Below are positions 7,001 through 53,417 of a stretch of DNA of 64,000 nucleotides, piece by piece. The stretch covers positions 3,968,001-4,032,000 of the forward strand of contig CM097885.1 of NCBI GenBank assembly GCA_044892525.1. The letters run 5' to 3'. The notes beneath the pieces were generated by a model. It did no database searches. It was not told the origin of the DNA and saw only the letters and a list, made by a program, of their open reading frames with translations. Every line of letters begins with the position of its first letter. Position 1 is the stretch's first letter. The position numbers were made by a program, and so were the translations under genes. This DNA comes from Schmidtea polychroa (lineage: Eukaryota).

Positions 7001-7859
7001 TGTAAATCTTATATAGGGATAAATCTTCTAACGGGAGATGCTGCTTTCTGGTGAGCTCGATTTTATAATCTGCAGTTTACACTAAGTTCAAAGTTTTCTT
7101 TATTACTCTCACTAAATCTTTAGTTTAATTTTCTTCCATCAACTAGCAATTCTGTTTTCTAGCCGGTCACTTTTATACCTCTCTCGTAATTTGAATCGCT
7201 GTGTAAAATTAGTTCGAATCCAATTTCGCCCCGGGTTTCCTCTTGTCGCTTTAAAGAATTTCTCCTTTGACGACTTACCTTAATTTGATTTTGAGGTTCT
7301 CTCACATCGCTCGGGTTTTCCATTTGTCGGGTTTTCCAGTGTCTCTAATTCTCCATTAGTTAATTAATTTTTAATAAATTTTAGTTTTTTATAATTAATG
7401 ACCCCCACTGATTTTATTTTATTATATTTGAACTCGTCTCATTACTCGGCTGATTCATAGCGGCATTTAAAAGTAAAGTTTTCATGAATGCCTTTAAGTA
7501 AATCTATCAGCGACACTAGGACATTTAAACAACACAACGAACGAATTTCAGGTTCCAAAATATTTTCTTATAGCTTTTATATTTAAAATCCAGCTCGTTG
7601 TCTAATTTCTAATTTTTTTTAAATCTTAAGGATTTCAAGATAAATTTTGTAAGTAAAATTCTTTTATCAAATTTATGAAATTTGTGAATTTAAATATTAA
7701 TTAAATATTAATTATTAATTTACATGAAATCATTTCTGATTTAATAATATTATATTTGAACACTTATCGAATGAAAAAGTGAATAAATTTATGAAATGTT
7801 ACATTGTTTAATATTAAATCATTTCATTAGCTGTTAAGAAGATCTCATTAAAAGAATGC

Positions 7860-8330
7860 GTAACAGAATTTGATAAAGTATAGAAAGCACCGATTGTCCT
7901 CATCGCATCGACAGCTCTCATTTTGGTAAACTTACCCAAACTGATGTGAAAGCAATTTGGAACATTTTATCAGTATTGTTGTTGCGGATTGCGCTGAAAT
8001 GCCTCACAAATAGCTGGCGGAGGTGAAATGTTAAGGCATTAATCAATTTGATATAAGGCAATTTTAGTATTGCATTTAGGTGCATTTTACTGCCATTCAA
8101 TACAGCAATAATTTCTCCACAACTCATATAACATCAGCAGCAGTAGCGATGGCGGTTTTCTCGTCGGTTCCATTCGTCATAGGAGCGCTTGATTTGTTGA
8201 GGCGATTTGTCAGCGCTTATATTCGGGTGGATTTTGATTGGATTATTTCTTTCACATTAATTATTAATTTAATTATAATAAATATAATGATAATATCGGA
8301 TGGAAGGCGCGGGGGGGGGGAGAATGACAA
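7860..8330 (-). repeat. Dispersed unidentified gene-like fragment (GEIIAVLNGSKMHLNAILKLPYIKL...)
   Basis: Near-identical copies at about 21900-22203, 33460-33960, 39278-39560, 49980-50430 and 58807-59100. Confidence 0.8.
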
Positions 8331-8445
8331 TGATTATCTTAATAATTATCTCATATAATAAATCAATAATAATAATAAGGCAAATAATAAATCAGATCAA
8401 AAGCCAAAATAAATCAATTTTTTGTTGAAATGTTTTTCTAATTTT

Positions 8446-9870
8446 TCATAATTTTTCAATTCTGCACCTGAGCAGCAATTTATCACTTTTGGCTGCTAAT
8501 TTATAGGCTGAGCGATCATAATAAATGCAAACTGGATAATTTCTGTCATCTGACGGTTTCCCCCATCCGGCATCATCAGGGCGATCTGAATATATCAGTG
8601 ACTCGCTCATATAAATGTTGCCATTTGCTGGATCGATCACATCGATTGTCACCGATTGATTGAACGGCCAGTCCAATTGCTCATCATTTGCCCCACGCAT
8701 CACACAGAAACCAACATCAACCCAATCATAATCATCCCCAATCTCCACCGTCAAGCACATTTTGTAACCGATTGGCCCGGAATAAAATGCCTTGCTGTAA
8801 ATCAATTCATTTCTCTTTTGTTGTGAAAATTTATCGATTTGCCATTCAAAAAATCCATAATTTATATATTTTTCACTTCCTAATTTTGTTTCAATCTGCC
8901 GAATTTCATTGGCGCATTTTGCCATTTCAAATTGCAACTGAATCTCAAATTCAAACATTTCAATAAATCAATAAATCACCTTTTCATTCTCCCGTTGCAG
9001 TCGCTGCTCGCATTTCTCTTTCATCTCATCAATTTGCTGTTGACAGTTTGCTTCAATCACCTCAATTTGCTCTTTGACCTGCTTTGCATCAATAACAAAT
9101 TAATAACAAATCAAATCAATAATCAAACTTGATTGATTGATCCAATATTTGTTTCCATCTCCATTCTCAATGAGCGATTCTCATTCTTCAATGCCACCAT
9201 TTCCTCATTCAATTCTTCTATTTCTGCTCTGTTCTCCGCCTCTTTCCTTTCAACATTGCACAATTTCACCTAAAATCACAAATATCAATTAAATTAATTA
9301 CAAATAAAATTTTACATTGATATTAATAATTTCCTCACGCAATTTGACATTCTCCTCTCTCATTGCCTGCATCTCATTGCACAAATTGCTGGTCTGATCA
9401 ATCAGTAATTTGCTATGGTCTTCATTGTTCTCATTGAGATGTATTTTCATTTCGTCCTTCTCTACTCCAATCATTTCGCATCCAATTCTATTGAACGGGC
9501 ATCTAATTGGTTGCTTGTTACATGTTCTCATGTGACTCTCCATCATGCACAACTCGGTTTTGAATACACAATTTTGCATTGGGCATTTTACAGTGACTTC
9601 AGATATCCTTAAATTGACTGGGTGATCCACAGAAACATCCTTATTGAAAAGAATAGTTTGAACTTCACAATATTTTGCTGCTCCTGGACAGAATTTATCT
9701 TTTCCATCCAAATAATGCTCAATGCAATCAGAACAAAAGCGACAACCGCAAGGAGCATTGCAAGCATTTATCATTAAACATTTGCAAATTCTGCATATCA
9801 ATTCACTGCTGATTTCATTATCAAATTCAAATTTATTTCTCTTCATCATTTCCCATACGCTTGCAAACAT
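8446..9870 (-). CDS. TRAF-like protein, copy 1 (about 430 aa; RING variant, TRAF zinc finger, coiled coil, MATH)
   Basis: Exons 9870-9316, 9269-9129, 9078-8980 and 8943-8446 are joined by phase-0 GT-AG introns of 46, 50 and 36 nt, and the spliced frame is open. RING CRIC...CGCRFCSDC...CP; MATH FYSGPIGYKMCL...MRGANDEQLDWPF. Confidence 0.9.
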
Positions 9871-10334
9871 TTTATCTAAAATTAATAAAATTATCAAAAT
9901 ATTTCAACATTTTACAACATAAATCATAAATCATACTTATTATATTGATTATTTCCTCTGACGTTTACAATTTCAATATTTATAATTTGTATTTTGATGT
10001 AGATAAACAAACATTTTATAAATATTGTATTTTAGCTTTGAGCGCAATTCGAAATATTATTAATGTTAATTTTCAGCGTTTTTCTCATTTATTTTAAATC
10101 TTACAAAATTATTTAAATTATAATTTGATAATAAAAAGTAAAATTTTAATGGAAAGTTAAATAAATCCAAATTAAAAATAGATCAAAATATAAAAATAAA
10201 TATTTTTCATAAAATATTAAAATAAAAAAAGTAATTATTTAAAGAAATTTATCTGAAATTAGAATTTATTTGAACAGATTAAAAAGAAATTCAAAATCAT
10301 CATAGCAAAAATAGAAATATAAATAAAATCAATA

Positions 10335-10715
10335 TAAACATTACAAGCTTTGTGATACCCAGTGCAAATCCCAATAGTAGACTAGTTTCGAGCTTTTGGT
10401 TCTCATCAGGATTATGCAGGAGACGCGAAGATTATTCTTCGCGCCAGTTAACTATATAATATTGCTGATTCAACTCGATTGCATACTTTCCCTGGTACAC
10501 TGGAAATCGCATCACTTGCAAATTAGCTAATTCACATAAGAAATATCTGCAAACTTGTAAAAATGGCGAATGAAAAATCATATTCACCTCTGGAGAACAA
10601 AATAGTTTAGACACAGAAACTTTTCACAAGTGCATCCGTAAACCTTTAGCTAAGCTCAAACTTCTCTACTATTGGGATTTGCACTGGTTATCACAAAGCT
10701 TGTAATGTTTATATT
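10335..10715. mobile_element. Penelope-like inverted pseudo-LTR pair
   Basis: Inverted repeat of about 45 bp (ACATTACAAGCTTTGTGATA.CCAGTGCAAATCCCAATAGTAG) at ~10335-10380 and ~10666-10712, adjoining an intact and a degenerate hammerhead. Confidence 0.6.
10374..10416 (-). ncRNA. Minimal type I hammerhead ribozyme
   Basis: The minus strand reads AUAAUC-CUGAUGA-G..C-GAAAC-UA-GUC-UACUAU: complete core, palindromic ACUAGU helix III, and helix I with one A-C mismatch. Confidence 0.75.
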
Positions 10716-10974
10716 ATTCAAATGTTAGACATCCATTACACCATTAAAATTCAATATTTTTTCTTGAAATAATTTTTAACAAAATAACAAAAAATTTTCA
10801 TTAAATTTTTAAAGAAAAATTGTTTAGGATTTGAATATAATTTAACTGGGTAACGCTAAACGGGTTATTAATGTATTCTGGAATTGTGAGGTTTTGGCCA
10901 TTGATCTAATGATCTCGTTATGGTTAGTAATGTTTGGAATGATCCACAATTAGATAAGAATGAATAAATGTTAA

Positions 10975-11163
10975 TTGACTGATATGTCGAATGATGAAGT
11001 GAATATTAGCATTGATACTAACAAACAAGATGAGCCAAAATATACGATGGTATTGCCGTATTCGGAAGGATATAAAGATTTCAAAAGAAAGATATGTGAA
11101 CAACTAGCTAGACAAAGATTTGTCTATAATAAAAATAATTGTGAATCAAGTGAATTTGATTAA
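10975..11163 (+). pseudogene. Possible Penelope-like element ORF remnant
   Basis: VLPYSEGYKDFKRKICEQL resembles the LPY motif between RT and GIY-YIG in PLEs, and it lies next to the hammerhead repeats. Confidence 0.35.
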
Positions 11164-11986
11164 TAATGGATAATTAAAATAAAAATACTGAAGAACAATC
11201 AACACAATAATGAATCCAATAGATAAATAACTGAAAAAAAACAAATGCAAACATTTTGCCTAAAATGATCAAATAAAATTTCCAAAAATCCCAAAGACTT
11301 TCTCTAGTCAAGTTTTTCACTTTGAAAAATTTTAATTTTCGCAAGAGAAATTTTGTTGTCAACAAATATATTGGTGATGTCGTCCTCTATATTTTTGCCG
11401 AAATAATTTTTTGAAAATCTCAAAGCCCCACGCTACGGCGAGATAAAGCTTAAAAGTTAACCTTAAAATCAATATTTGCAGTTTTTAATCAATAATTACA
11501 CATTTAAATCAATACTTGAATTTCTTTTTAAAAATCGTTTAAAATCAATAAATACACTTTAAAATCAATAAAAAATATTTTTAAATCAATAATCACTACT
11601 TGACCTTGAAAGGGCCCCATGTGGATAACCAGAGTGCGATAATTAATGGTGGTTTGTCACTTGTATGCCTCTCTACTATGCCGAGAGCGGAAATTTCGGC
11701 AAATATAAAAGCATATCACACGTTTCCATGAAATCTCTATAAATTCCCATTATAAAAAGGAAATGGGTTGGGATAATTTCATATCATTTCATGCATCATC
11801 ACAAACATTCCGCATGATTGCCTATTCTAAATTCGATTTCTGTTCCAATGCATTTGTATTTATTAATTACAAATAGCTCTGAAATGCATTAAAATCTTCA
11901 TTTAATTTTTATTTAAAGATTTAACCAAAAAAAATAATTAGATTGATTTTCCTTAAGGGCTGCCAAGCAATTTGTCTTTGGGTAGG

Positions 11987-12142
11987 NNNNNNNNNNNNNN
12001 NNNNNNNNNNNNNNNNNNNNNNNNNNNNNNNNNNNNNNNNNNNNNNNNNNNNNNNNNNNNNNNNNNNNNNNNNNNNNNNNNNNNNNNNNNNNNNNNNNNN
12101 NNNNNNNNNNNNNNNNNNNNNNNNNNNNNNNNNNNNNNNNNN
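11987..12142. other. Assembly gap or masked run (156 N)
   Basis: Run of N. Confidence 0.98.
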
Positions 12143-12239
12143 ATTTCTTTATTATTATAATAAAATGTTAAATGAACCCGCCAAATTCAGACCGAACCTA
12201 AAATGCCTTTCCCAAGAATTATGAGTTATCGTATCAGCT

Positions 12240-12813
12240 CAGATGTCGTTTTGGATTCTTTGATTTCCATTTACCGGGCAATTGAAAGGGCTGAATTCAA
12301 CGCTAACAATCTAATTGAACTCCAGGAAGCCATTCGGCACTAAATGGGCATCAAATCGAGCAGTGAAATCATGAAACGATCTCAGAATGGCGACCAAATA
12401 ACCGAAGAGATGCAAGCAGCGAATGAACACAACTAATTGAATGCGCTAACATCAGAGAAATATCCGAGGAATCCAATCGAATTGACAATTGCATTGAGAC
12501 CGAGCATGGAAAGCATTCACAATTGGCAGTGCAATCAGCCAGGGGGAATCCTCAGGTACGTGATGAACCATTTATAGGAAATCCTCCACAAGCTGCAAAT
12601 TATATGCCGCTTTGTCTCTCCGTGTCGGTTGTATTTGCTTGATATCCATCTCGCCGCACTTTGGGCGCTGTCGTGGCGCTCCTTTCATCAATGCTATTAT
12701 ACACCTTTGCACATTCGGCATGCGCGCTCTCTCTGTCGCGGTTTTCGTAATAGCTTATAACAGCATATTCCACATGATAATCGCTCCTGGATGCGCATTG
12801 GCGGTGCTCGATT

Positions 12814-12864
<51 letters not shown>

Positions 12865-13515
12865 AATTTTATTTTAACTAAATGTCTAGGGCCACCTGGC
12901 CAGGAAGGGGAGATCGATTCTCACCCTTATGTAGTCTGCTGCTTTTATTCAATACTCTGTGGATGTTAGAGTGCTCGATTCATAATTTCTGATTAGTGCT
13001 GCTCATCCCTACAAATATATACATAGAGGTTTTGTTGTCATGGCTTTCCATTTGTCTATTTGCATTCCATACTTGAATTTCCCCTTTATTTCACGCACAG
13101 GAACAATCGGCCTCGTATCCGTTTCCTTGCCTCCTTATTAACCAGTCTGACCAATCTGCAATTGCCTCAGCTATCCCCGCTAATTCCTATCCTTGCATCT
13201 GCCTTAACTGCGCCGTAACCGTTCAATCTATAACTGCTACATTAATGATATATATAAATGCTGCCGTTGGCCCCCGATTATTATTATTACGCAATCAAAT
13301 CCTATATTTAACCTATCAGTTAGATGTAATAGTTTCTTGACCTTGCACAAGTGAAAATGCGCTTGTGCTGATATTGCATTGCCCATTGCTGCTCCCACAT
13401 TCCCACCGCTGTCCTGTTATCATTTACAAACACCTTTTATGGTTCCTCCTGCTATCAGCATTGCCATTATACCAATTATTACATCATTATCCACGCTTCC
13501 TTGCTTTGCTTTCTG
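12240..13515 (-). mobile_element. Degenerate 3' part of the gag-env retroelement
   Basis: The duplicate at 55790-56937 is contiguous with the env-like region 56937-57400. GC-richer decayed coding sequence. Confidence 0.4.
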
Positions 13516-13518
13516 GCT

Positions 13519-13665
13519 GGTTTCTGTGTGATGCGTGGGGCAAATGATGAGCAATTGGATTGGCCGTTCAATCAATCGGTGGCAGTCGATGTGATCGATC
13601 CAGCAAATGGCAGCATTTATATGAGCAAGTCAATGAAATATTCAGATCGCCCTCGTCATGCCGGA
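13519..13665 (+). pseudogene. Orphan TRAF MATH-domain fragment
   Basis: GFCVMRGANDEQLDWPFNQSVAVDVIDPANGSIYMSKSMKYSDRPRHAG, in the opposite orientation to the full genes. Confidence 0.88.
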
Positions 13666-16815: not shown

Positions 16816-17450
16816 ATGACCCACCTTAATCAACCTTTCTCATCTGCAATCATCTTATCCTTCATAAATACCTTAACTACACAACTAAACACAAACAAAA
16901 TTGATACTCAATTTGCCCTAAATGAATTGGAAAGGATAAATGGAAACATTAATCCACAAAGATATAATTTCCCTAAAATGCCTGATGTAATTCATAAAAA
17001 ATTAAAATCTGACTGTGAACTTTTATCTGTTAAAAGATTTAAATTTAAAATTAAACCTAAGGAGGAGATTTTGAAACTATTAAGGGATCACTTGGCTATG
17101 CAAAGACCGACCGTGGATATTTCAGACGCCTTCGGGTCCATCAAACATTACCTCATATGGCACAATTTAACAGAAATGGGTCTTATCGACAAAACCGTAA
17201 ATCTAATTAAAGATATGTATAATGGTGTAAAAACCTTCTTTGAATGTGAAGGAGAAAAATCATCTTCAGTACCTTTTATAAAGGGGGTTAAACAAGGTTG
17301 CTCAATATCTATGACTTATTTTTGGTTAGCAATTGATTTTATACTAAATAAATCCTAGTAGATCATCCTTTTCTTTTCCATGGACATAATATCAGCATAT
17401 TAGCTAAGGCAGGCGATATCGTACTAGCATCTCTCTCTTAAATATCAATT
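16816..17450 (+). mobile_element. Non-LTR retrotransposon RT fragment
   Basis: DISDAFGSIKH...GVKQGCSISMTYFWLAIDF, followed by a degenerate YADD-like AGDIVLAS. Confidence 0.85.
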
Positions 17451-17898
17451 AAAAAAGCACTGACAGAAACAGTTAACCTTGCACAAAAGTAAATTTTAAT
17501 TTAAACCATCAAAATCAGGATATTTCTCACTCAATAAAAACGAATGCCCTACGGAACTATACAATGAAAAACTACTGTTGGGCTGAATTGAAATAAAAAA
17601 TAAGAAAATAGCATTAAGAAATAAGACAAACATGATAAACAAATGAGTAAAAATAAACAAAAAATTAAAAATAAAATAAGACACATAATAAAGAAGAAAT
17701 AATAAATTAGGCAATGAAAACTAAAACAAAAAATTAAAATTAAAAATTAAGATAAGAAAACAGCAATAATAAGGAAAATAACACAAAAATCAAGTAGTTA
17801 ATAAGAAAATTAAGAAAATAAATAAAAAATATAATAAAAATAAAGAAAAAATAAGAAAATTAGCAAAGAAACATAAAAATTAAATTAAAATAAATAAT

Positions 17899-17952
17899 TA
17901 AGCGGCACTCAATTTTGATTGGTCCGCACATACGCAAAAATTAGTATATAAG
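17899..17952 (+). promoter_or_regulatory. CCAAT-box plus TATA promoter-like motif
   Basis: TAAGCGGCACTCAATTTTGATTGGTCCGCA...TATATAAG, matching 3433-3485. Confidence 0.55.
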
Positions 17953-18417
17953 GTAAGCACTGAAACAAAAATTTCATTGTTAACAAATTAACCATTTAGG
18001 TAAGAAGACTTTTAATTACATGCAGTGTTAACAAATTAACCATTTAGCGTTCAACAGTTATATAGATCAATCATCAGGACAACCTAGGAGAAATTGAAAA
18101 CAAAACCATCGATTCAGCCCACAAATCAGTCGAGTTATTACTTCAACAAAACTTTAGAATTAAATCTTACCTATTTCGAACGGATACTTTGGAAAATTTT
18201 AGTTTTGCATTAATATGTAATCTGATTAAGTAATTTATTATTTGTAATATCTGAATGTAAAATTAAAGGACTTTTAAAGAACACTTCTCTTTTCACTCGA
18301 TATCATTAAATAATTAATTTTATGGTATAATTAGTAGCAACTATTATTTTTTTTTTGCGAGTTTTATATGTTTTATGTTTTATTTTTTTATGATTTATTA
18401 AAAATTCAATGAGTAAC

Positions 18418-18550
18418 GTGGAGCTGAAATGTTTCTTACCATGGTGTGAGGGGCCTTCGGGTGCTCAGCAGGTGGGTACGGAGCATTTCAGTCACGCAGC
18501 TGACTCAGGCCGAAATGTGGGGGCTTCCTCACAGGTCCGTCGCTGAAGAT
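18418..18550 (+). ncRNA. Candidate structured RNA (paralogue of 3883-4010)
   Basis: CTGAAATGTTTCTTACC pairs with GGTACGGAGCATTTCAG (16 of 17). TGTGAGG/CCTCACA forms a second helix, and there is a C(UUCG)G tetraloop. Confidence 0.55.
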
Positions 18551-20325
18551 GTGCCTAATCTAGTGGGAAATGCTAGGGTGAAGATAAAATTTATGCAGAG
18601 TATTGGAAGAGAATTCGTATTATAAAAATTTAGATGGCAGGGAGTGTCAGGAGCAGGTCTACACAGTGATTGAGGGTGTCGCACATTTGGCATAGTTAGC
18701 AATTTCTTTACATTCGGAAAATTCGCACAAAATTCGTCACTTCACCTTAATCATCCCATCACACAAGTAAAAGTATAAGAGCTCAGCTATGATAAATCCT
18801 ATTTTAGACCCACTCATTACTCCGAAAAATAAATCTCGTCGAGACGATATTTGAATTAAGATATTCTCAGAAGCGAAAACACCTTGTGAATCTCATCAAT
18901 TTTTCTATCACTCACACTAGTATCACCTCTCGAACACCAAATCTATTTCCAATTTTTTCCCTTTTAATTATCTGTTCCTCAAAACGCCATAAAATCTGTC
19001 TCACCATCTCCATTCGTCTCGTATAATCTAAATCAGTATAGGTCCATTTGTCATCATCTCCTTACCCTATAGGTATTTGAAAAATAAACGCGAAAAACAA
19101 TTAAATACATTTTATTTTGCACAACAAAACGAAAAATTGAGGTTTACTTTCGAAAATGATCCATCGCCGTGCCTGTTTGCAATACTGAGCATATCGTAAG
19201 CCCGATCTGATCTGCGAATAGCCAGCATGAGACTCCACGAGGAATGAATTTCCTTCTAAATAATTCCAATCAAACTCGACGCACGCACGGAGAACAGTAG
19301 GCTGCTAAAATTCATCGAACCATCTTCTAATAACCCTAGAACAGTTGCAAACTCACGATAGACACCGTTAATTTCCACGATTTGATGATAATTAAGCATT
19401 CCGCTACGAAAATTGCAAAATTAGCCGATGAGAAAATACTCCATAAGCAACGCATGTAGAATGAGTAAAAGTACATGTGGCATGACAAAAGTTTGATAAA
19501 AATACACCACTTAGTCTACCGGATGAGATAATACCACTTATGCCGTCTGAGGAATTTTGAATAACATAAGAGATCCGTGAGAGTTCACACACGGAAATGA
19601 CGAGATAAGTGCATTCACAGATTTTCCGCGTATACATAAATCCAAACATCGAGATAATATCATCCAGCAGTATTCTGAAAAAAACTACATCGTTATCAAC
19701 TGACTAGCCAAATGTTAGTTTTCCATCCAATGTGAATTTTTCTTGAATACCACCTGCACGTCACCAAATGACATAATCTACATTAAGAGCATGTATAACC
19801 AACAGCTGTACGTCATTGCGGGTACACGAATTGTTATCTGAATTAACGTATCGACTAAAATCCGTCCGAGACATAAATAATTTAAGTACCTCGATAAGAA
19901 TAACCAATTTAACATTTTTTTTGGATTAAAATTGAGGTTTCTGTTATCTAATGACCCGAAGTGAAAATAAATAAGGATTAATTTGATTTTTATTCTACGC
20001 ATCTTATTCTGTTATTTAATCAATTTTAATATGTATCCATTCCCACTCGGATGGCCATGAGAATATTTCCCACAAACATTCGGGCGTATTTATCAATTTT
20101 CTCGTAAAGAATTTCGACGACTATGGGGGTGATGCCATGGGGTTTTGCCTTTTAAATTTCTTTTATAGAACTATGCTAGTGCAGTAATGATCGATCGTAT
20201 TGGAGGTGAGTTTTCTCTTGTCGGTATAAGACCGCAAATGTTTATTTTTATGTACCATTGGTCTACGGATGAAGTGAATTATTGATAATTACTCTAAATT
20301 TTCTTTCCTTTTATAGCCTACGATT

Positions 20326-21031
20326 ATGAATCCAGTCGCCAAAAATGTTCTCAAACCTTGTTACTCGTGCGCAGATAAGAACGTAACCATCAAGGAACTG
20401 CAGGCACAAATCGGCTACTCAAACGCAAGATTGATGAATTGGAAGGCACATGGTTTAGCCCAGTGCAAATGAAGGAAGTGAGAAAGAAATTGTATAGAAG
20501 CGAACACTGCCAAGATAGCCTGATCGCAGAAAATAGATCTCAGTGTATGCTCATTAAGGAACAATCTAAAGCCCTTCATAAGGTTTACTTACAAGCTGCA
20601 ACAACGCGAAAGATCGTAAGCATTCCGATCAACGAAGAGGACAATGTGTTCCCCACGCATCACGATCAGCCTCTCGACAGGTCGGCACATCGAAGAAATC
20701 ATGCCAAGGGTGTGTGGAGACGGAGCTCTCGTCCAAATCTAATGACGTAATCATCACAGCACCCCCTACTGTCAGTCCTTCTTCCAAGCCCAAACGGCGG
20801 CAACTATCTCGGGCCGAACGAAAGCGAAACCAGAGGGAGAGAGGTGCAGAAAGAGAAAAGAAGCAAGTATCAGCTAATGCATCAACAGAAGGTAGTGTTG
20901 CTCCTATAACTAGTATAAACACTGGAATCCCAGGGCGCATTATCTCCGCAGCTGGCGTCACATGGAAGGAGAATGCATCCGAATTTTTCAACCTAGAAGA
21001 GCTATTAGCAGAAACTGAATGGGAGAAGTGA
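20326..21031 (+). pseudogene. Unknown CxxC/coiled-coil/basic protein ORF (two frameshifts)
   Basis: After a TTTTATAG acceptor: MNPVAKNVLKPCYSCADKNVTIKELQ..LKRKIDELEGTWFSPVQMKE...; basic KRRQLSRAERKRNQRER; acidic tail FFNLEELLAETEWEK. Confidence 0.7.
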
Positions 21032-22203
21032 CCCAGTTTTGCGAGCAAACCGAAGTTCCAGTCGTAACTCTTGTGATTTTCAATGTGATGCTCTGTGTCT
21101 TCTTGTATTGTCTGTGTTTTTCTCTTGTACATCGATAATTTAATAAATCAGTTTTGTTTAAGTCATTGCGTTTTGCTTTATGTATCGGTAAACTTTACTT
21201 TTCCTTTTCTCTACGAGATAATTTGGTTGGCTGACACCTTTGAATAGTGTATGATTTGCAACAAACTCAGAAAACGATGGAATGTCGAGTGCAGAGGTAG
21301 AGTAGGAAGACGTAAGACCTTCTATCGGCAGTCAGGAAAAGGGAAGTCGAGGCCTCGGAAAAGAGTAGTCCTAAGGCAGGGGCTCAACTGTTTTCTGGTG
21401 TCTCGCCGGCATAATACAGGACCAACATGAAGCAATTCATGGGTATTATGTTGGAATGCAGATCGTGTGGAGTTCTACTCAAGATTGACAGAAATATGAA
21501 CTATGTTAATGTAATGGGCTATCATCCTCTAGACGGGACTTAAAAGGCGTATGAGTCAACCGAGTAGCACCTCAGCACTACCTATTATAAACGACTCGAA
21601 TATTTATATATATTTAGGAGTCGATTTATCTTATAAACATAGACATAATATAGACGGAAGCCTAGAACAAGCACTCATAGACAATATAAACGCCTTCTAA
21701 TTACACCTACACCCAGCACAGGAAATCTCAGACAATAAAATCTTTATACACTCACGTCTAATGTTCACCTTGCGCAATTGTGAAATAAATCACATGATAC
21801 TCGATTCAAAGAGAAAGGAAGGAGTAATGGGTAATAATATTTTAGCAAATCCGACACGAGACCTTTAAGAGATCCAAATTTCATAAAGATGCAAAGCAAA
21901 AATTAAATAAAGTAATTCATTTAATGATTAAAAGAATGCGTAACAGAATTTGATAGAGTTTAGAAAGCACCGAGTTCACTCATCGCATCGACAGCTCTCA
22001 TTTTGGTAAACTTACCCAAACTGATGTGAAAGCAATTTGGAACATTTTATCAGTATTGTTGTTGCGGATTGCGTTGAAATGCCTCACAAATAGCTGGCGG
22101 AGGTGAAATGTTAAGGCATTATTCAATTTGATATAAGGCAATTTTGGTATTGCATTTAGGTGCATTTTACTGCCATTCAATACATCAATAATTTCTCCAC
22201 AAC

Positions 22204-22300
22204 TAGGGATTGCAAAAACAAACAAGAAAAAAGAATACCGGTATTTCAGTATTGACATTTATTGGTACCTGGGTCCCGGTATCAATACCGGTATTCCAAA
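22204..22300 (+). mobile_element. hAT-type terminal inverted repeat end
   Basis: TAGGGATTGCA terminus with repeated palindromic ATACCGGTAT. The same end occurs at ~39190-39277, attached to a hAT transposase fragment, and at ~58715-58806. Confidence 0.65.
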
Positions 22301-22329
22301 TAATAATAATTTTTTATGTAATTATGTAA

Positions 22330-22610
22330 TGTAACGATTGCCACTATTTCTGTGCGATAATGCACTAGAAGAGCGGAAATTCGACTTAAATAAATGGGAA
22401 GCAATCCAATGTTTTTTGAAATCAACATTTGAGGCCAGCAAACAATCAATCAAGCGCTAAGCAAACTGGCAGCAAGGAAGCAGAGACCAAATGAATCATT
22501 GACGATATTTGCAAGTGAATTAAGGAGATTAGCAAAGAAAGCTATGAACGGAAAATTACAGGAGGAAAATTTAATCGGGTATTTAGTTGAAGGATTGCGA
22601 AGGGAAAAAA
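22330..22610 (+). mobile_element. Gypsy-type gag fragment
   Basis: FASELRRLAKKAMNGKLQEENLIGYLVEGLRRE, the same as 58401-58690. Confidence 0.65.
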
Positions 22611-22612
22611 TC

Positions 22613-23422
22613 ACCTCAATTTGCTCTCTGATCTGATTGCATCAATAACAAATCAATAATAAATCAAATCAATAATCAAACTTGATTGATTGATCCAATA
22701 TTTGTTTCCATCTCCATTCTCAATGAGCGATTCTCATTCTTCACTGTCGCCATTTCCTCATTCAATTCTTCTATTTCTGCTCTGTTCTCCGCCTCTTTCC
22801 TTTCAATATTGCTCAATTTCACCTACAATCACAAATATTAATAAATTAATTGCAAATAAAATTTTACATTGATATTGATAATTTCCTCACGCAATTTGAC
22901 ATTCTTCTCTCTCATTTCCCGCATCTCATTGCACAAATTGCTGATCTGATCAATCATTAATTTGCTATGACCTTCATTGTTCTCATTGAGATGGAATCTC
23001 ATTTCGTCCTTCTCTACTTCGTTCATTTCGCATCCAATTCTATTGAACGGGCATTTTATTGGCTGCTTGTTACATGTTTTCATGTGGCTCTCCATCACCT
23101 CTAATTCATCTTTGAATTGACAATTTTGCATAGGGCATTTCACTATCACTCCTGAAATTCGACTGTTAGCATTATTGTCTACTACAATATCATTTGCAAA
23201 ATTTATCATTTTCTTTCCGCAATGTTTTGCTGCTCCTGGACAGAATTTATCTTTTCCATCCAAATAATGCTCAATGCAATCAGAACAAAAGCGACAACCG
23301 CAAGGAGCATTGCAAGCATTTATCATTAAACATTTGCAAATTCTGCATATCAATTCACTGCTGATTTCATTATCAAATTCAAATTTATTTCTCTTCATCA
23401 TTTCCCATACGCTTGCAAACAT
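22613..23422 (-). pseudogene. TRAF-like copy 2, 3'-truncated (no MATH)
   Basis: The RING/zinc-finger exon and exon 2 are intact. The gene is cut a few codons into exon 3 by the gag fragment. Confidence 0.88.
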
Positions 23423-34066: not shown

Positions 34067-35515
34067 TTATGCAATTCTGCACCTGAGCAGCAATTTATCA
34101 TATTTGGCTGCTAATTGACGGATTGAGCGATCATTATCATAAATGCAAATCAGATTTATCGGACCCTCATCATAAATGCGAATTGGATCATTTCTGCTCT
34201 TTGACGGTTTCCTCCATCCGGCTGCATCAGGGCAATCTGAATATTTCATTGACTTGCTCCTATAAATGCTGCCATTTGCTGGATCGATCACATCGATTGT
34301 CACCGATTGATTGAACGGCCAATCCAATTGCTCATCATTTGCCCCACGCATCACACAGAAACCAACCTCAACCCCAAGACCCCCAATCTCCACCGCCAAA
34401 CACATTTTGTAACCGATTTGCCCGGAATAAAATGCCTCGCTGTAAATCCATTCATTTCTCTTTTGCTGTGAAAATTTATCGATTTCCCATTCAAAATATC
34501 CATAATTTATATATTTTTCACTTCCTAATTTTGTTTCAATCAGCCGGATTTCCTTGGCGCATTTCGCCATTTCAAGCTGCAACTGAATCTCAAATTCAAA
34601 TATTTCAATAAATCAATAAATCACTTTTTCATTCTCCCGTTGCAGCCGCTGCTCGCATTTCTCGTTAATCTCATCAATTTGCTGTTGACATTTTGATTCA
34701 ATCACCTCAATTTGCTCTCTGATCTGCTTTGCATCAATAACAAATCAATAACAAATCAAATCAATAATCAAACTTGATTGATTGATCCAATATTTGTCTC
34801 CATCTCCATTCTCAATGAGCGATTCTCATTCTTCACTGCCACCATTTCCTCATTCAATGCTTCTATTTCTGCTCTGTTCTCCGCCTCTTTCCTTTCAATA
34901 TTGCCCAGTTTCACCTACAATCACAAATATCAATTAAATTAATTACAAATAAAATTTTACATTGATATTAATAATTTCCTCACGCAATTTGGCATTCTCC
35001 TCTCTCATTGCCTGCATCTCATTGCACAAATTGCTGATCTGATCAATCAGTAATTTGCTATGACCTTCATTGTTCTCATTGAGATGTATTTTCATTTTGT
35101 CCTTCTCTACTTCATTCATTTCGCATCCAATTCTATTGAACGGGCATCTAATTGGCTGCTTGTTGCATGCCCTCATGTGGCTCTCCATCACCTCTAATTC
35201 ATCTTTGAATTGACAATTTTTCATTGGGCATTTCACTATCACTTCTGAAATCCGTAAATTGATCGCCTGATCTTCATAAACATCTTTAATAAAATTTATC
35301 ATTTTCTTTCCACAATGCTTTGCTGCTCCTGGACAGAATTTATCGTTTCCAACCAAATAATGCTCAATGCAATCAGAACAAAAGCGACAACCGCAAGGAG
35401 CATTGCAAGCCTTTATCATTAAACATTTGCAAATTCTGCATATCAATTCACTGCTGATTTCATTATCAAATTCAAATTTATTTCTCTTCATCATTTCCCA
35501 TACGCTTGCAAACAT
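34067..35515 (-). CDS. TRAF-like protein, copy 3
   Basis: Same four-exon structure with splice sites conserved. The MATH has a short internal duplication-like insertion (IRIYDEGPINLICIYD). Confidence 0.88.
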
Positions 35516-35689: not shown

Positions 35690-38600
35690 AATTATCAGTG
35701 TTTTTCTCATTTATTTATAAAATTATATTATAACAATCTTTCATTAGCTTTGATTCAAATGATTTAACTCTGTCACAGTTTATTATCCTTGGTGCTCCAA
35801 ACTTCATTATCCACTCTTCTTTCAGTAATCTTACCACTGTTTTTTCATCTTGCGATTTCACTGCATATAAAGAAATAAACTTACTATGATGATCTATAAT
35901 CCCAAGAATATATCTTTCTCCTTTCATTTCAAGTTTAATTGGATTCAAAAATCTATATAGATTGTTTCAAATAGTTTCGAGTCACTTTTGCAAATTATTT
36001 CTTTTTTTGTTTTAGTTGTATCAACCTTTCTTTTCTGACAGTTTTCACAGGATTGTACAACATTACGAATAGATTGCTCCAAATCTTTCATATCAAAATT
36101 GTTTGATACATACATTTTTACTTTATTAGTACCCGCGTGACAGAGCTTTTTATGATATTCTATGATGAATTCAGACTTGTTTTCTTCTGGAATCCAAATT
36201 TTATTATTATTTGTCATAATCACTCCGTTGAAATATTTAAAAAAATGTTTTATCTGGCATCAAATTATTATTTTCTTTTATATTTTTTATTTCTTTCGAG
36301 TTCTTTTGTCATATATTTTCAATATTATCAGTCATCAGTGTCAAAAATCTTGTTTCTAATTTACCCATTTTAGAATTTTCATGAATCATTTGCAATTGAA
36401 CACATGTTTCACATTCTTTTCTAGATTAAGCGTCGGCATTATTGTGGTTATCACCTTTTCTGTATTGAATCTCCATGTCCAGACCATTAAGATGGTTTAT
36501 CCAAGTTTGAAATTATGGGGTAATAGCTTTCTTTGTCTTCATCATAAATGTAATGGCTTTGTGATCCGTCCTCAAAATAAACTTTTTACCATATAGATAA
36601 TGCTTAAAATCACCAGTAAAATAAAATATAGATAGTAATTCCTTTCTTGTTATACAATAACCCAACTCATGTTTATTCATAGCTTGGCATCTATATGCGA
36701 TTACTCTTTCTTTACTTCCATCTTTTTGAGACAGAACAGCACCAATGCGGTCAAAACTTGCATCTGTATCTCAAATGAATGGCTTCGAAAATTCTGGGAA
36801 CTTCAATACAGGTGTAGATGTCAATTTCAGTTTTAAATTTTGAAATGAAGCTTCACACTCATCATTCCACATCAGCTTCTTTTGTTTACTTCCACATAAC
36901 GCTTCTAATACTTTGAAATCTTTGGTGTAATTTTCTATAAATCTGCGATAGTAATTTGCCAAGCCTAAAAATCCTCTCAAACTTCTTACGCATTTAGGTC
37001 TTTCAAAATGTTTAATAGTTTCAATCTTGCTTTCATCCGTACGTATTTGATCTTCACCAATGATATGACCCAAAAATTTTACTTCTTTCCTTTTGAATTG
37101 ACATTTTTCTGGACTTATTTTAAGATTTGCTAATTTAATCTTTTGAAAAACCTTTTCAATGGTACTATAATGTTCATTCAATGTCTTTGAAAATATAAGG
37201 ATATCATCCAGATATACAATTGTTCCATTCCAATTTTATTCTCCAAGAACCAAATTCATAAGTCTTTGAAATGTTGCTGGTGCAGCTGCTATTCAAATGG
37301 AATTCTGTTAAAGTAATATTGCTTGCTTTTTGTCGAAAATGCTGTTTTCAATTTTGATGCATCATCGAGTTCTACTTGATAATAAGCATTGCCTAAATCA
37401 ATTGTCGTGAAAATCTTTGCTCCGTCAAGAATATCTAATAATTCATCAGTATTTGGAATGGGAAAAATCGGTCTTTCGGTTATATTATTTAAAGCATGGT
37501 AGTCCAAGCATATTCTTATATCACTACTGTTTTTCTTTTTAACACATACTAATAGAGAATTCCAAGGAGATGTACATTCTGATATAATGCCATATTTCAA
37601 CATTTCTTGAATATTTTCTTCAATTTTTTCTATTAAATGTATAGGTTGTGGCCTTGGGTTTATTACAATCGGACTACCTTTAGTAAGTATTTCATGCTTT
37701 AATAGTTCGGTTTTCCCAACATCCCATTTATGTTTCATAAAAATACCGTCAAACGTGGAAATTAAATTATTTATTATCTTATCTTCACTTATGTGGTTAT
37801 TAAATATATTTTCCATAATTGCATTTATTTTGTTTGTACGGTTTTCTATTTGCAATTGCATTCCAAATCTTTCGAGAAAATCTATACCTCCTATTAACTT
37901 TGGGTTTATATTTTTGGCTACAACGAATTATACTTTTTTAATACCAGAAATTTTATCAACTTTTACATTTAATAAAGTTTTACCGCAAATTGCAATCGGG
38001 CTATCATTCGCATTTTTTTTTAAATTACTTGTAGTCATATTCAAATTTCCAAGTTTTTTAAAAATATTATAATCAATCACACTTATTTTACCTCCAGTAT
38101 CTAATAGGCATACTAATTTTACATTATTAATCATCACGGTAACACTGGGCCCTCTCTGCATTTTATCATATACTATTATATCATTCCGTTTATCACGATT
38201 AAGAACATTTATTTCATTAGAAGTTAGAGGTGGGTCTTTAAAAACTTCATCCATACAAAATTTATTAATGTATATATAAATATAATTTCTATAATCAAAA
38301 ACACCATCACAACAGTTATCATCCAAACTATCACAATCATTCAAAATCATAGAAGCCTTACTCATATCATTAATTACCTTTAATTTATTGCTCCGATCGC
38401 CTCCTCGTGTGGTGAAGCATTCCCATTTGGGTACTCAAAATCAGCCTCTGGATCTTCGTCACCGAATGCAGCCACTGATTTATGGAATTTTCGACATCTG
38501 TCTGGAAATAACTAATGGCACTGATGTTTGAAATGTCCAGATCTTTTACAATGGGCACATTGAATATTGGGGCATTCAGATCTTCTATGACCTTCTTCGT

Positions 38601-47500: not shown

Positions 47501-48371
47501 AAATTTGACCTTGAAAAAAATTTTTTACCCACCGCCGGGGGGTGTGCCAGAGGTGACATGTGCAAGTGGTGACACATCCTACTACTTTGAGATGATCGCA
47601 ATGATGACTGTTGCAACGGAAATTGTGATTATGATTGGCAGGACAACATCGACGATGGCCATTTTCACACGCTTTCAGAAATGATGTTTATATCATTGAT
47701 GATCTAGTGAAAACATTGTTTGTGAGTAAAATAAGACCCTCCTGTGGCCCTTTAATCAATCTCTATCGCTATTAATATCAACCATTATCACTCGCGCTTT
47801 GTACAAAAACAAAGTTTTAACGGTCCTCATTCTAAATTACAGTGGAAACTTCAATGGAGAAGTCTCGCCAGACCTGGTTCGAATCACGGCTGAGGCAACA
47901 TAGCAGGTGAACAGAGATAAAGCGTTGGTGCTCGATCAAAGTTGGATGGAATTTTTATTGTAACTTGCGGATTACGTCATAACGTTACACTGGAAGATCG
48001 AATCAATACAGAACTGTGAGAGGAGAACCATTGAGTGATGCAATAACTAAATATTACCATACAAGAGCAAGTCCAATGGCAATTCGTCATGAGAGCAGGC
48101 ATTCATGTGAATATTGGCGTTACACCTATTCAGAGATGGAACTGTTTCCCGTTATTTCCTGTGGCATCACGAGGCTACTCAATCGACAGCATTGATTTCC
48201 TCACCTGAAAAAAGAAAGACAGCAAAGCCTTAACCCGGAAAGTGAAAAAGGACCCGGAAGCTGAAATCTGCGCGAACTAGCCTACCCGATTGGAAACCCG
48301 ATTGGAATTGGAAAGCAATCATTTTGAATGATAATAAATTTTATATATTAAATCATAAATGGAAATTAGTC

Positions 48372-48753
48372 ACTGAGGAAGCCACTGATAGGGACCCAAT
48401 GATAGGAAGCCACTGATAGGAAACCACTTATAGGGAGCCAATGATAGGAAGCCACTGATAGGAAGCCACTGATAGGAAGCCACTGATAGGAAGCCACTGA
48501 TAGGAAGCCACTGATAGGAAGCCACTGATAGGAAGCCACTGATATGAAGCCACTGATAGGAAGCCACTGATAGGAAGCCACTGATAGGAAGCCACTGATA
48601 GGAAGCCATTGATAGGAAGCCCCTGATAGGAAGCCGCTGATAGGAAGCCACTGATAGGAAGCCACTGATAGGAAGCCACTGATAGGAAGCCACTGATAGG
48701 AAGCCACTGATAGGAAGCCACTGATAGGAAGCCACTGATAGGAAGCCACTGAT
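48372..48753. repeat. 14-bp minisatellite (GCCACTGATAGGAA)n
   Basis: About 27 head-to-tail units with no spacers. Confidence 0.95.
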
Positions 48754-51995: not shown

Positions 51996-53417
51996 TCATA
52001 ACTTTTCAATTCTGCACCTGAGCAGCAATTTATCACTTTTGGCTGCGAATTTATAAATTGAGCGATCATTATTATAAATGCGAATTGGATCATTTCTGTC
52101 ATCTGATGGTTTCCCCCATCCGGAATGATAAGGCCAATCTGAATATTTCATTGACTGGCTCCTATAAATGTTGCCATTTGCTGGATCGATCATATCGATT
52201 GTCACCAATTGATTGAAAGGCCAATCCAATTGCTCATCATTTTCCCCACGCATCAAACAGAAATCGATATCAACCCAAATAGTCTGAGAACCCCTAATCT
52301 CCACTGCCAAGCAAATTTTGTAACCGATTGGCCCGGAATAAAATGCGTCGCTGTAAATCAACTCTTGTTTTGAAAATTTATCGATTTGCCATTCAAAAAA
52401 TCCATAATTTATATATTTTTCACTTCCTAATTTTGTTTCAATCTGCCGAATTTCATTGGCGCATTTTGCCATTTCAAATTGCAACTGAATCTCAAATTCA
52501 AACATTTCAATAAATCAATAAATCACCTTTTCATTCTCCCGTTGCAGTCGCTGCTCGCATTTCTCTTTCATCTCATCAATTTGCTGTTGACAGTTTGCTA
52601 CAATCACCTCAATTTGCTCTCTGATCTGCTTTGCATCAATAACAAATCAATAACAAATCAAATCAATAATCAAACTTGATTGATTGATCCAATATTTGTT
52701 TCCATCTCCATTCTCAATGAGCGATTCTCATTCTTCACAGCCGCCATTTCCTCATTCAATTCTTCTATTTCTGCTCTGTTCTCCGCCTCTTTCCTTTCAA
52801 TATTGCTCAATTTCACCTAAAATCACAAATATCAATTAAATTAATTACAAATAAAATTTTACATTGATATTAATAATTTCCTCACGCAATTTGACATTCT
52901 CCTCTCTCATTGCCTGCATCTCATTGCACAAATTGCTGGTCTGATCAATCAGTAATTTGCTATGGCCTTCATTGTTCTCATTGAGATGTATTTTCATTTC
53001 GTCCTTCTCAACTCCAATCATTTCGCATCCAATTCTATTGAACGGGCATCTAATTGGTTGCTTGTTACATGTTCTCATGTGACTCTCCATCATGCACAAC
53101 TCGGTTTTGAATACACAATTTTGCATTGGGCATTTTACAGTGACTTCAGATATCCTTAAATTGACTGGGTGATCCACAGAAACATCCTTATTGAAAAGAA
53201 TAGTTTGAACTTCACAATATTTTGCTGCTCCTGGACAGAATTTATCTTTTCCATCCAAATATTGCTCAATGCAATCAGAACAAAAGCGACAACCGCAAGG
53301 AGCATTGCAAGCCTTTATCATTAAACATTTGCAAATTCTGCATATCAATTCACTGCTGATTTCATTATCAAATTCAAATTTATTTCTCTTCATCATTTCC
53401 CATACGCTTGCAAACAT
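51996..53417 (-). CDS. TRAF-like protein, copy 4
   Basis: Four exons with an open spliced frame. The N-terminal exon is almost identical to copy 1 and the MATH exon is divergent. Confidence 0.9.

What the first reader, a model, noticed from the sequence alone, without database searches (positions are those of the whole stretch)
8446..8943. TRAF paralogues with a hypervariable MATH exon inside a near-identical duplication
Seen: copies 1 (8446-9870) and 4 (51996-53417) lie in a ~5-kb duplication whose introns, intergenic DNA and RING exon are almost identical (only a handful of amino-acid differences in ~185). Their MATH exons differ at dozens of residues with indels, for example VEIGDDYDWVDVGF versus VEIRGSQTIWVDIDF, and MSESLIYSDRPDDAG versus RSQSMKYSDWPYHSG. 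Copy 3 is a third variant (VEIGGLGVEVGF). The core motifs stay fixed. Established: the TRAF MATH domain is the receptor-peptide-binding module. Inference: this is a diversifying recognition system, driven by positive selection or by patchy gene conversion among paralogues, possibly immune or host-interaction related.
Basis: partly seen in the sequence, partly recalled or inferred. Interest (0 to 1): 0.78.

Follow-up and report, generated by a model that had tools for sequence, protein, structure and literature searches.

The report
Mosaic planarian TRAF genes, diversifying MATH groove
Two TRAF signalling genes look alike except in their binding (MATH) exon because paralogues have exchanged DNA, not because that exon mutated fast, yet across this very large gene family the peptide-binding groove of the MATH domain shows strong diversifying selection.

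Summary
Copies 1 and 4 are intact four-exon TRAF genes (RING-like, TRAF zinc finger, coiled coil, MATH). They differ by about 1% over roughly 4.6 kb (upstream DNA, exons 1-3, introns). Their MATH exons differ by 9.7% plus indels.

The contrast is a mosaic, not in-place hypermutation:
- Synonymous divergence jumps together with non-synonymous divergence (dS 0.015 to 0.11).
- Copy 4's MATH exon and more than 1 kb of 3' flank are 97-99% identical to another paralogue 79 kb away.
- About 18 other paralogues are closer to copy 1's MATH exon than copy 4 is.
- The exon 1 and exon 4 trees conflict, each with 100% support.

The family-level idea is supported:
- The genome holds at least 150 MATH exons (1093 first-look candidates), mostly open.
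- Over 26 distinct paralogues, omega is 1.5 for the MATH exon and 0.35 for exon 1.
- M2a beats M1a by 2dlnL = 193, with 22% of codons at omega about 5.8. Exon 1 gives 0.7.
- Selected codons sit at the equivalents of the TRAF2 polar pocket and serine finger. The hydrophobic pocket is conserved.
- Two other pairs show divergence confined to the MATH exon, with both flanks near-identical.

The planarian TRAF expansion is published. I found no report of this selection pattern. An immune role is untested.

The parts
8446..8937 (-). c1 exon 4: end of the coiled coil plus the MATH (TRAF-C) domain and stop codon; this is the finding's interval
   Evidence: Translation and gene model. Pfam PF21355 E 2e-17. 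Human TRAF2 in PDB E 4e-13. AF2 model matches TRAF2/3 at TM 0.63-0.64.
8980..9081 (-). c1 exon 3 (coiled coil)
   Evidence: Gene model. A NAGNAG acceptor was seen in the c4 copy in spliced contigs.
9129..9269 (-). c1 exon 2 (coiled coil)
   Evidence: Gene model.
9316..9870 (-). c1 exon 1: RING-like finger plus TRAF-type zinc finger
   Evidence: Pfam zf-C3HC4 E 0.0016 and zf-TRAF E 3.5e-4, both below the curated cut-offs. Omega 0.35 across paralogues.
8710..8751 (-). c1 variable patch 1 (exon-4 codons 63-76; end of beta3, the loop, start of beta4). It matches TRAF2 R393-F410, the polar pocket.
   Evidence: Codons 63, 65, 67, 70, 71, 72, 74 and 75 have P(omega>1) above 0.95. Alignment to TRAF2; hot spots from PMC6125299.
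8560..8610 (-). c1 variable patch 2 (codons 110-126; beta6 and the beta6-beta7 loop). It matches TRAF2 441-457, including the serine finger.
   Evidence: Codons 112, 114, 119 and 122 have P above 0.95. W125 (TRAF2 F456) is invariant and D118 (F447) and G124 (S455) are nearly invariant.
8497..8550 (-). c1 variable patch 3 (codons 130-147; beta7 and the following helix; rich in indels)
   Evidence: Codons 130, 137, 140, 142, 145 and 147 have P above 0.95.
51996..52484 (-). c4 exon 4 (MATH), of the L032 type
   Evidence: 97% identical to G000:C1:3940554-3941051 but 89% to c1. Informative sites are 43 L032-type against 6 c1-type.
52527..53417 (-). c4 exons 1-3 with introns 1-2, 99% c1-type
52370..52406 (-). 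Switch interval in c4, from c1-like sites to L032-like sites, inside exon 4
   Evidence: Last c1-type site is 52406 and the first run of L032-type sites starts at 52370.
8893..13516 (.). Near-identical tract shared with 52440-56936 (about 99%; interrupted by an N run and one indel)
34067..35515 (-). c3, a third intact paralogue with its own MATH variant and a 12-codon insertion
22612..23422 (-). c2, a truncated paralogue (exons 1-2 and 12 nt of exon 3) with no MATH exon
13516..13665 (+). Inverted 50-codon MATH-exon fragment at the upstream end of the c1/c4 shared tract
   Evidence: tblastn E 2e-23; blastn self-hits.

Best explanation
The interval is the MATH-domain exon of one member of a very large, lineage-specific TRAF gene family (RING-like, TRAF zinc finger, coiled coil, MATH) in a planarian genome. 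Two processes shape it.

(1) Paralogues exchange DNA by non-allelic recombination, gene conversion or segmental duplication. A recent event made about 4.6 kb of c1 and c4 about 99% identical (upstream DNA, exons 1-3 and the first 45-100 nt of exon 4). Their MATH exons stayed at ordinary inter-paralogue distance. The c4 MATH exon and its 3' flank belong to the lineage of paralogue L032. The c1 MATH exon belongs to a different lineage. One of the two genes is therefore a chimera, most simply c1.

(2) Across the family, selection favours amino-acid change on the MATH face that binds peptides in human TRAF2. The polar-pocket and serine-finger positions and the neighbouring loops change. The hydrophobic pocket and the beta-sandwich core do not.

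The inferred result is a repertoire of E3 or adaptor proteins with a common signalling half and individually different peptide specificities.

Shown here: the mosaic, omega above 1, the site mapping by alignment, intact reading frames and spliced transcripts of the family. Inferred: the direction of the exchange, altered binding specificity, and any immune or anti-parasite role.
For: Mosaic:
- NG86 for c1 against c4 gives dN 0.015 and dS 0.015 in exons 1-3, and dN 0.094 and dS 0.113 in exon 4.
- The c4 exon is 97% identical to C1:3940554 and only 89% to c1. c4 ranks about 20th among hits to the c1 exon, whose best non-twin hit is 93%.
- In 150-nt windows c4 is c1-like down to about 52450, then 94-99% L032-like through the exon and about 700 nt of flank.
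- Informative sites (L032-type against c1-type) are 43:6 in the exon, 41:0 in the next 236 nt and 208:5 beyond.
- The trees conflict: exon 1 groups c1 with c4 at 100%, and exon 4 groups c4 with L032 at 100%.

Selection:
- 73% of 325 paralogue pairs have omega above 1 in exon 4, and none of 253 pairs in exon 1.
- IQ-TREE with GY+F3X4 gives omega 1.50 for exon 4 and 0.35 for exon 1.
- My own M0 fit reproduces the IQ-TREE likelihood. M0 against omega = 1 gives 2dlnL 10.3. M2a against M1a gives 193.3, with 22% of codons at omega 5.8. Exon 1 gives 0.67.
- The signal holds in three segments, each with its own tree (10.6, 69.6 and 50.4), and without two possibly dead copies (189.7).
- Selected codons are nine-fold enriched in segments chosen beforehand from TRAF2 hot spots (Fisher p 3.5e-5). 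R393, Y395 and S453 equivalents are selected. L432, F447, F456 and C469 equivalents are conserved.

Recurrence:
- L003/L006 have 0 differences over about 1.4 kb on the 5' side, 41 in the exon and 3 in the 3' flank. L012/L026 are similar.
- Their variable patches are identical to patches of other paralogues.

The genes are live:
- About 130 of 150 scored MATH exons are open.
- The splice acceptor is conserved in all sampled copies.
- Contigs of three runs carry joints at my introns 2 and 3.
Against: - No contig or read spans the c4 switch point, so the mosaic rests on the assembly.
- My PHI test for recombination within exon 4 was not significant (p 0.14).
- The run-length test was confounded by clustered rare variants.
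- Neither MATH type has a donor above 97% apart from L032 and c1's twin, so the direction and age of the exchange are uncertain.
- Recombination can inflate site-model tests. The pairwise omega values and the per-segment trees reduce this concern but do not remove it.
- The 26 paralogues were picked as the best matches to c1, not sampled at random from the family.
- Site mapping uses a sequence alignment to TRAF2 and a mediocre model (pLDDT 70), not a structure of a complex.
- No binding, expression-response or knock-down data bear on function.
Confidence: 0.7

Rival explanations
1. In-place rapid evolution. A recent 5-kb duplication produced c1 and c4. Their MATH exons then diverged quickly through positive selection or local hypermutation.
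For: The flanking DNA, introns and exons 1-3 are about 99% identical while the exon is 9.7% diverged. Family-wide omega is above 1.
Against: - Synonymous divergence in the exon is as high as non-synonymous divergence (dS 0.113).
- c4's exon and its variable loops are shared with L032 at 97%.
- About 18 paralogues are closer to c1's exon than c4 is.
- c4's 3' flank follows L032 for more than 1 kb.
Confidence: 0.04
2. Relaxed constraint. In a redundant family the MATH exons drift almost neutrally, and omega near 1 merely looks like selection.
For: - Whole-exon pairwise omega is about 0.8-1.3.
- Some copies are truncated or frameshifted, namely c2, L032 and L043.
- About 18 of 150 loci carry stop codons.
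Against: - M2a is far better than the nearly neutral M1a (2dlnL 193), with a class at omega 5.8.
- 65 alignment columns are invariant.
- Removing L032 and L043 changes nothing.
- Selected sites cluster on one functional face.
- Reading frames and splice sites are kept in all 26 sampled copies.
Confidence: 0.08
3. Assembly artefact. In this highly repetitive region the near-identity of c1 and c4, or the c4 junction, comes from collapsed or chimeric assembly or from uncollapsed haplotypes.
For: - N runs sit at equivalent places in both copies, at 11987-12142 and 55533-55728.
- c1 has a 100% identical twin 94 kb upstream.
- Public runs gave only contigs of 117 nt or less, none spanning the junction.
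Against: - A contig from an independent run matches c4's private 9-nt deletion allele exactly, at 52318-52398.
- All three genes keep full reading frames and splice sites across the joins.
- The same 5'-identical, MATH-different pattern recurs at other loci.
Confidence: 0.07

Closest known systems
Human TRAF2 and TRAF3 (TRAF-C/MATH domain bound to receptor peptides)
   Same: The domain order is the same. The MATH exon aligns to TRAF2 at E 4e-13 and the model matches TRAF2/3 at TM 0.63-0.64. Most equivalents of the hydrophobic pocket are conserved: L432, F456 and C469 map to I98, W125 and I138.
   Different: The polar-pocket (R393, Y395) and serine-finger (S453, S454) positions are conserved among TRAF1/2/3/5 (PMC6125299). 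Here they are the most variable, positively selected positions. F410 and F447 are replaced by Gly and Asp. The fourth RING ligand reads Cys where TRAF2 has His. The RING and zf-TRAF Pfam scores fall below the curated cut-offs.
Published TRAF/MATH expansion in Schmidtea mediterranea (Swapna et al. 2018, PMC6109357)
   Same: The same kind of gene is involved. That paper reports 121 MATH domains in 99 transcripts, mostly TRAF-like and well expressed.
   Different: The paper counts transcripts and does not analyse selection, binding-site variation or mosaicism. My searches of the paper library found no such analysis. The genome holds many more loci, at least 150 scored and 1093 candidates.
MATH-BTB (BATH) and F-box families of nematodes and plants
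   Same: These are lineage-specific, unstable, expanded families of ubiquitin-ligase recognition proteins, hypothesised to act in pathogen defence (PMC1866355). From my own knowledge, Thomas 2006 reports positive selection in the MATH substrate cleft. I did not read that paper here.
   Different: Those are cullin-3 adaptors with a BTB domain. The genes here have a RING, a TRAF zinc finger and a coiled coil, and no BTB.
TRIM5 and fish finTRIM B30.2 domains
   Same: In both, a RING and coiled-coil E3 scaffold is kept constant while the loops of a C-terminal recognition domain diversify in multigene arrays. This comparison rests on my own knowledge and is only an analogy.
   Different: The recognition fold differs (B30.2/SPRY rather than MATH). 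No viral target is known for the planarian genes.

Membership tests
TRAF family (TNF receptor-associated factors) | C-terminal TRAF-C/MATH domain | tested here: met
   PF21355 scores 64 bits against a cut-off of 27.4. TRAF2 in PDB gives E 4e-13. Foldseek matches TRAF2/3/6 and SPOP MATH domains.
TRAF family (TNF receptor-associated factors) | N-terminal RING finger | tested here: inconclusive
   zf-C3HC4 scores 18.7 bits, below the cut-off of 21. The Cys spacing is visible in the translation, with Cys in place of the usual His.
TRAF family (TNF receptor-associated factors) | TRAF-type zinc finger(s) | tested here: inconclusive
   zf-TRAF scores 21.6 bits, below the cut-off of 27, with E 3.5e-4. 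Only one finger is detected.
TRAF family (TNF receptor-associated factors) | Coiled coil (TRAF-N) before the MATH domain, giving trimers | not tested
   Exons 2-3 are rich in charged residues and Leu and look like heptad repeats. No coiled-coil or oligomer prediction was run.
TRAF1/2/3/5 binding mode, Px(Q/E)E | Conserved polar pocket (R393, Y395) and serine triad (S453-455) | tested here: not met
   The equivalents are T63, E65, D122, A123 and G124 in c1. Positions 63, 65 and 122 are hypervariable across paralogues.
Diversifying recognition-domain gene families (MATH-BTB or TRIM-B30.2 type) | Lineage-specific expansion in clustered arrays | tested here: met
   At least 150 loci are clustered on contig C1 at about 2-17 Mb and 257-268 Mb. 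The window holds three full copies, one truncated copy and one fragment.
Diversifying recognition-domain gene families (MATH-BTB or TRIM-B30.2 type) | Omega above 1 localised to the ligand-binding surface, with the scaffold under purifying selection | tested here: met
   The surface was assigned by alignment to TRAF2, not by a structure of a complex.
MATH-BTB (BATH) | BTB domain | tested here: not met
   There is no BTB hit, and the whole 429-aa product is accounted for by RING-like, zf-TRAF, coiled-coil and MATH parts.

The most novel reading that the evidence does not exclude
The planarian genome encodes hundreds of TRAF paralogues that act as a germline array of intracellular recognition proteins. 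They would share a constant RING, zinc-finger and coiled-coil signalling half. Each would carry a MATH groove whose polar and serine pockets are individually diversified by positive selection and by exchange of patches among paralogues. This is comparable to TRIM5/finTRIM or NLR arrays. The targets might be viruses, or the giant retroelements of this genome that themselves carry MATH domains according to an earlier scan note that I did not check.
Probability: 0.3. Interest if true: 0.75.

Novelty: new variant of a known kind. Interest (0 to 1): 0.5.

Why it matters
Planarians are a major regeneration model, and their innate immunity is poorly mapped. The TRAF expansion is known only as a count of transcripts. 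This analysis shows that the constant signalling half is under purifying selection. The residues that set peptide specificity in human TRAF2 change under strong positive selection. Together these turn a list of paralogues into a testable hypothesis: a diversified recognition repertoire. The selected positions give a short list of residues to swap in binding assays. The analysis also carries a methodological caution. A 'hypervariable exon in a young duplicate' can be produced simply by the end of a conversion or duplication tract. Synonymous sites, and a search for the nearest paralogue of each segment, distinguish the two cases.

Tried and rejected
I therefore did no ancestral reconstruction by any route. 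I used pairwise counts and site-class likelihoods instead.
I could not map the 200-kb neighbourhood or the block structure around c1, c4 and L032.
- The PHI test within exon 4 was not significant (p 0.14).
- A GENECONV-like longest-run permutation test flagged 163 of 325 pairs. It is confounded by spatial clustering of rare variants, so I do not use it as evidence.
- A four-gamete test on variable-patch 'alleles' found no quartets, because almost every gene has a private allele: 21, 15 and 19 alleles among 26 genes.
- Reads: only Logan contigs of 117 nt or less were available. None spans the c4 switch point. Depth cannot be assigned to single paralogues.
- The search for homologous proteins with the exon alone found nothing because of its length window. 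The spliced 429-aa protein has no reference, so I did not paste it.
- The representative search gave best full-length relatives at only 54-59% identity, without names or taxa.
- I considered, and set aside for lack of evidence, the idea that the whole gene is transposon cargo. It has introns and lies in segmental duplications, but repeats do flank it.

Full report
WHAT IS THERE

The window is G000:C1:3968001-4032000 of a 781-Mb genome. It has about 33% G+C and short GT-AG introns of 42-47 nt. An earlier follow-up note of this scan calls the genome planarian. I did not verify the species.

On the minus strand lie three complete four-exon genes, c1, c3 and c4. There is also one copy cut off inside exon 3 (c2) and one inverted 50-codon MATH fragment.

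Each complete gene encodes about 430 residues:
- Exon 1 has a RING-like finger and a TRAF-type zinc finger. Both Pfam hits are below the curated cut-offs.
- Exons 2-3 look like a coiled coil.
- Exon 4 is a MATH/TRAF-C domain (PF21355, E about 1e-17).

The nearest solved relative is human TRAF2 (E 4e-13). An AlphaFold model (pLDDT 70) matches TRAF2/3 at TM 0.63-0.64.

CHECKING THE OBSERVATION

The c1 and c4 regions align from about 8288 to 13516 and from 51825 to 56936.

Substitution rates between c1 and c4:
- upstream DNA: 0.9% (25/2722)
- exon 1: 0.7%, which is 3 amino-acid changes
- introns 1, 2 and 3: 0, 1 and 0 differences
- first 45 nt of exon 4: 0
- rest of exon 4: 9.7% (42/435) plus 15 gap columns
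- 156-nt 3' flank: 3.9% plus 17 gap columns

Homology ends after that flank. The contrast is real. However, the divergent exon sits at the end of the near-identical tract, not inside it.

WHY c1 AND c4 DIFFER THERE

If the exon had diverged in place after a recent duplication, its synonymous sites should be as similar as the flanks. They are not:
- Exons 1-3 have dN 0.015 and dS 0.015.
- Exon 4 has dN 0.094 and dS 0.113. Raw counts are 8.5 synonymous and 34.5 non-synonymous differences.

A search of the whole genome with each exon gives the following:
- c4's exon is 97% identical to a paralogue at C1:3940554-3941051 (L032, 79 kb upstream) but only 89% to c1.
- c1's exon, apart from a 100% twin 94 kb upstream, is closest to C1:4036552 (93%). 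About 18 paralogues rank ahead of c4.

In 150-nt windows c4 follows c1 from far upstream down to about 52450. It then follows L032 at 94-99% through the exon and about 700 nt of flank. After that it follows L032 more loosely for a further 600 nt.

Three-way informative sites (L032-type against c1-type) agree:
- exon: 43 against 6
- next 236 nt: 41 against 0
- beyond: 208 against 5

The switch lies between 52406 and 52370.

ML trees conflict with full support. Exon 1 puts c1 with c4 (100%). Exon 4 puts c4 with L032 (100%).

L032 has lost the 5' part of exon 1, upstream of c4 position 53102. A stretch that reads like a reverse-transcriptase fragment lies there instead. What remains of its exon 1 carries the motifs otherwise private to c1 and c4.

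The simplest reading follows. c4 and L032 form one lineage with its own exon-1 type and MATH type. c1 acquired that lineage's 5' half by conversion or recombination and kept a MATH exon of another lineage. The direction is an inference. That one of the two genes is a mosaic is shown, given the assembly.

THE FAMILY

The c1 MATH peptide finds 1093 first-look candidates in the genome. All 150 that were scored have E at or below 1e-44, and about 130 are free of stops. They cluster on contig C1 at roughly 2-17 Mb and 257-268 Mb.

From 43 fetched loci I obtained 26 distinct MATH exons. All have the same acceptor context. 23 of them have an intact exon 1.

Pairwise NG86 values:
- Exon 4 has mean dN 0.114 and dS 0.095, with omega above 1 in 73% of 325 pairs.
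- Exon 1 has mean dN 0.068 and dS 0.27, with no pair above 1.

The loci were chosen by similarity to c1's MATH protein. That choice lowers exon-4 distances but should not raise omega.

IQ-TREE with GY+F3X4 gives omega 1.50 for exon 4 and 0.35 for exon 1.

I wrote M0, M1a and M2a likelihoods. The M0 fit reproduces IQ-TREE's likelihood and omega exactly.
- M0 against omega = 1: 2dlnL 10.3 (p about 0.001).
- M2a against M1a: 2dlnL 193.3, with 22% of codons at omega 5.8.
- Exon 1 as control: 0.67.

Recombination can inflate such tests. I therefore repeated the test on three segments, each with its own tree. The values were 2dlnL 10.6, 69.6 and 50.4. Without the two possibly dead copies the value was 189.7.

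WHERE THE SELECTED SITES ARE

Twenty-four columns have posterior above 0.95.

I used the phmmer alignment to TRAF2 and the hot-spot list of Park 2018 (PMC6125299).
- Selected: the equivalents of R393 and Y395 (polar pocket), S453 (serine finger), R448 and G468.
- Also selected: most of the beta3-beta4 loop, two beta6 positions, and the stretch after beta7.
- Conserved (posterior about 0): the equivalents of the hydrophobic pocket, F410, L432, F447, F456 and C469.

Segments defined in advance from TRAF2 393-410, 447-456 and 465-470 hold 11 of 28 selected codons. Elsewhere the count is 9 of 135 (odds ratio 9, p 3.5e-5).

Most key sites lie in ungapped columns between invariant residues, so alignment error is unlikely there.

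The hot segments also have a longer tree (9.0 against 2.7 substitutions per codon). By my rough arithmetic this means about twice the synonymous divergence. That fits patches escaping homogenisation. It could also reflect multi-nucleotide changes.

Among the 26 genes there are 21, 15 and 19 distinct alleles of the three patches.

THE PATTERN RECURS

- L003 and L006 have no difference over about 1.4 kb (upstream DNA through exon 3), 41 differences in the MATH exon and 3 in 450 nt of 3' flank.
- L012 and L026 behave alike.

In L003/L006 the exon has 3 synonymous and 23 non-synonymous differences. Three synonymous changes in 94 sites is more than the flank rate predicts.

Their variable patches are identical to patches of other paralogues:
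- L006 matches L009, then c3, then L007.
- L003 matches L043, then L004.

This looks like exchange of short patches. My formal tests of it failed or were confounded.

EXPRESSION AND ASSEMBLY

Public runs hold only short contigs of this region.
- Three runs contain joints that remove exactly my introns 2 and 3. Two of them use an alternative acceptor 3 nt away.
- One contig matches c4's private 9-nt deletion allele without error.

The family is therefore transcribed and spliced as modelled. Nothing spans the c4 switch point, so the mosaic depends on the assembly.

COMPARISON WITH WHAT IS KNOWN

The TRAF/MATH expansion in Schmidtea mediterranea is published, with 121 MATH domains (PMC6109357). 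Two TRAF-like genes have been knocked down (PMC7586133).

My library searches found no analysis of selection, groove variation or mosaicism in these genes.

Conceptually the closest systems are these:
- the unstable MATH-BTB and F-box families of nematodes and plants (PMC1866355)
- TRIM-B30.2 arrays (from my own knowledge)

The genes here are canonical TRAF-type proteins, not BTB adaptors. They do not keep the Px(Q/E)E-binding residues of TRAF1/2/3/5.

VERDICT

- The in-place hypervariability reading is rejected.
- The 'diversifying recognition family with exchange among paralogues' reading is supported at family level.
- Function is inferred, not shown.

Noticed in passing
window 17000-22611 and 58399-64000: A 5.6-kb inverted repeat at 99.0% identity runs to the window's end. 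Its inner boundary at 22611 is exactly where paralogue c2 loses the rest of exon 3 and its MATH exon. An earlier scan note places a TG...CA mobile element inside it.
   Followed up: partly
window 13516-13665 (+): A 150-nt MATH-exon fragment in inverted orientation lies exactly at the upstream end of the c1/c4 shared tract. It is 93-95% identical to c1 and c3. The shared tract is therefore bounded at both ends by MATH sequence.
   Followed up: partly
window 9540-9666 (c1), 53087-53213 (c4), compared with c2 and c3: The linker between the RING and the TRAF zinc finger exists in two sharply different forms. One is shared by c1, c4 and L032 and the other by c2, c3 and the other paralogues, with many silent and replacement differences. 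In the exon-1 tree c1 and c4 sit on a branch of length 0.10.
   Followed up: partly
window 11987-12142 and 55533-55728: N runs lie at equivalent positions of the two near-identical copies.
   Followed up: no
G000:C1:3882311-3882802 and 3907684-3908196: c1 has a 100% identical twin 94.1 kb upstream, and c3 has an equal-scoring one at a similar offset (about 94.4 kb). This suggests a large tandem block duplication or uncollapsed haplotypes. c4 has no twin at that offset.
   Followed up: partly
L003/L006 (C1:4035055 and 3945725) and L012/L026 (C1:15769483 and 16025570): In these paralogue pairs divergence is confined to the MATH exon, with both flanks near-identical.
   Followed up: partly
L032 (C1:3939054-3942551): This paralogue has lost the 5' part of exon 1, including the RING-like finger. 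A stretch that translates like a reverse-transcriptase fragment (by eye) lies in its place. Its MATH exon is still open.
   Followed up: partly
window 52625/52628 (intron 2 acceptor of c4): This is a NAGNAG acceptor. Contigs of different runs use either AG, which adds or drops one Gln codon.
   Followed up: partly
window 48368-48755: A minisatellite of about 390 nt with a 14-nt period; self-matches occur at offsets that are multiples of 14.
   Followed up: no
window 37292-37927 (-): An open frame with a reverse-transcriptase domain (RVT_1, E 8e-8), probably a retroelement remnant between the TRAF copies.
   Followed up: partly
window 7847-8285 and at least five other places in the window: A repeated element of about 440 nt abuts the 3' end of c1's homology with c4. 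It is 96-100% identical to the flanks of several other TRAF loci.
   Followed up: no
public protein representatives P0001-P0003: The best-scoring public relatives of the MATH exon are giant proteins with 9-13 tandem MATH domains (1606-3052 aa, about 30-35% identity). Their origin is unknown.
   Followed up: no
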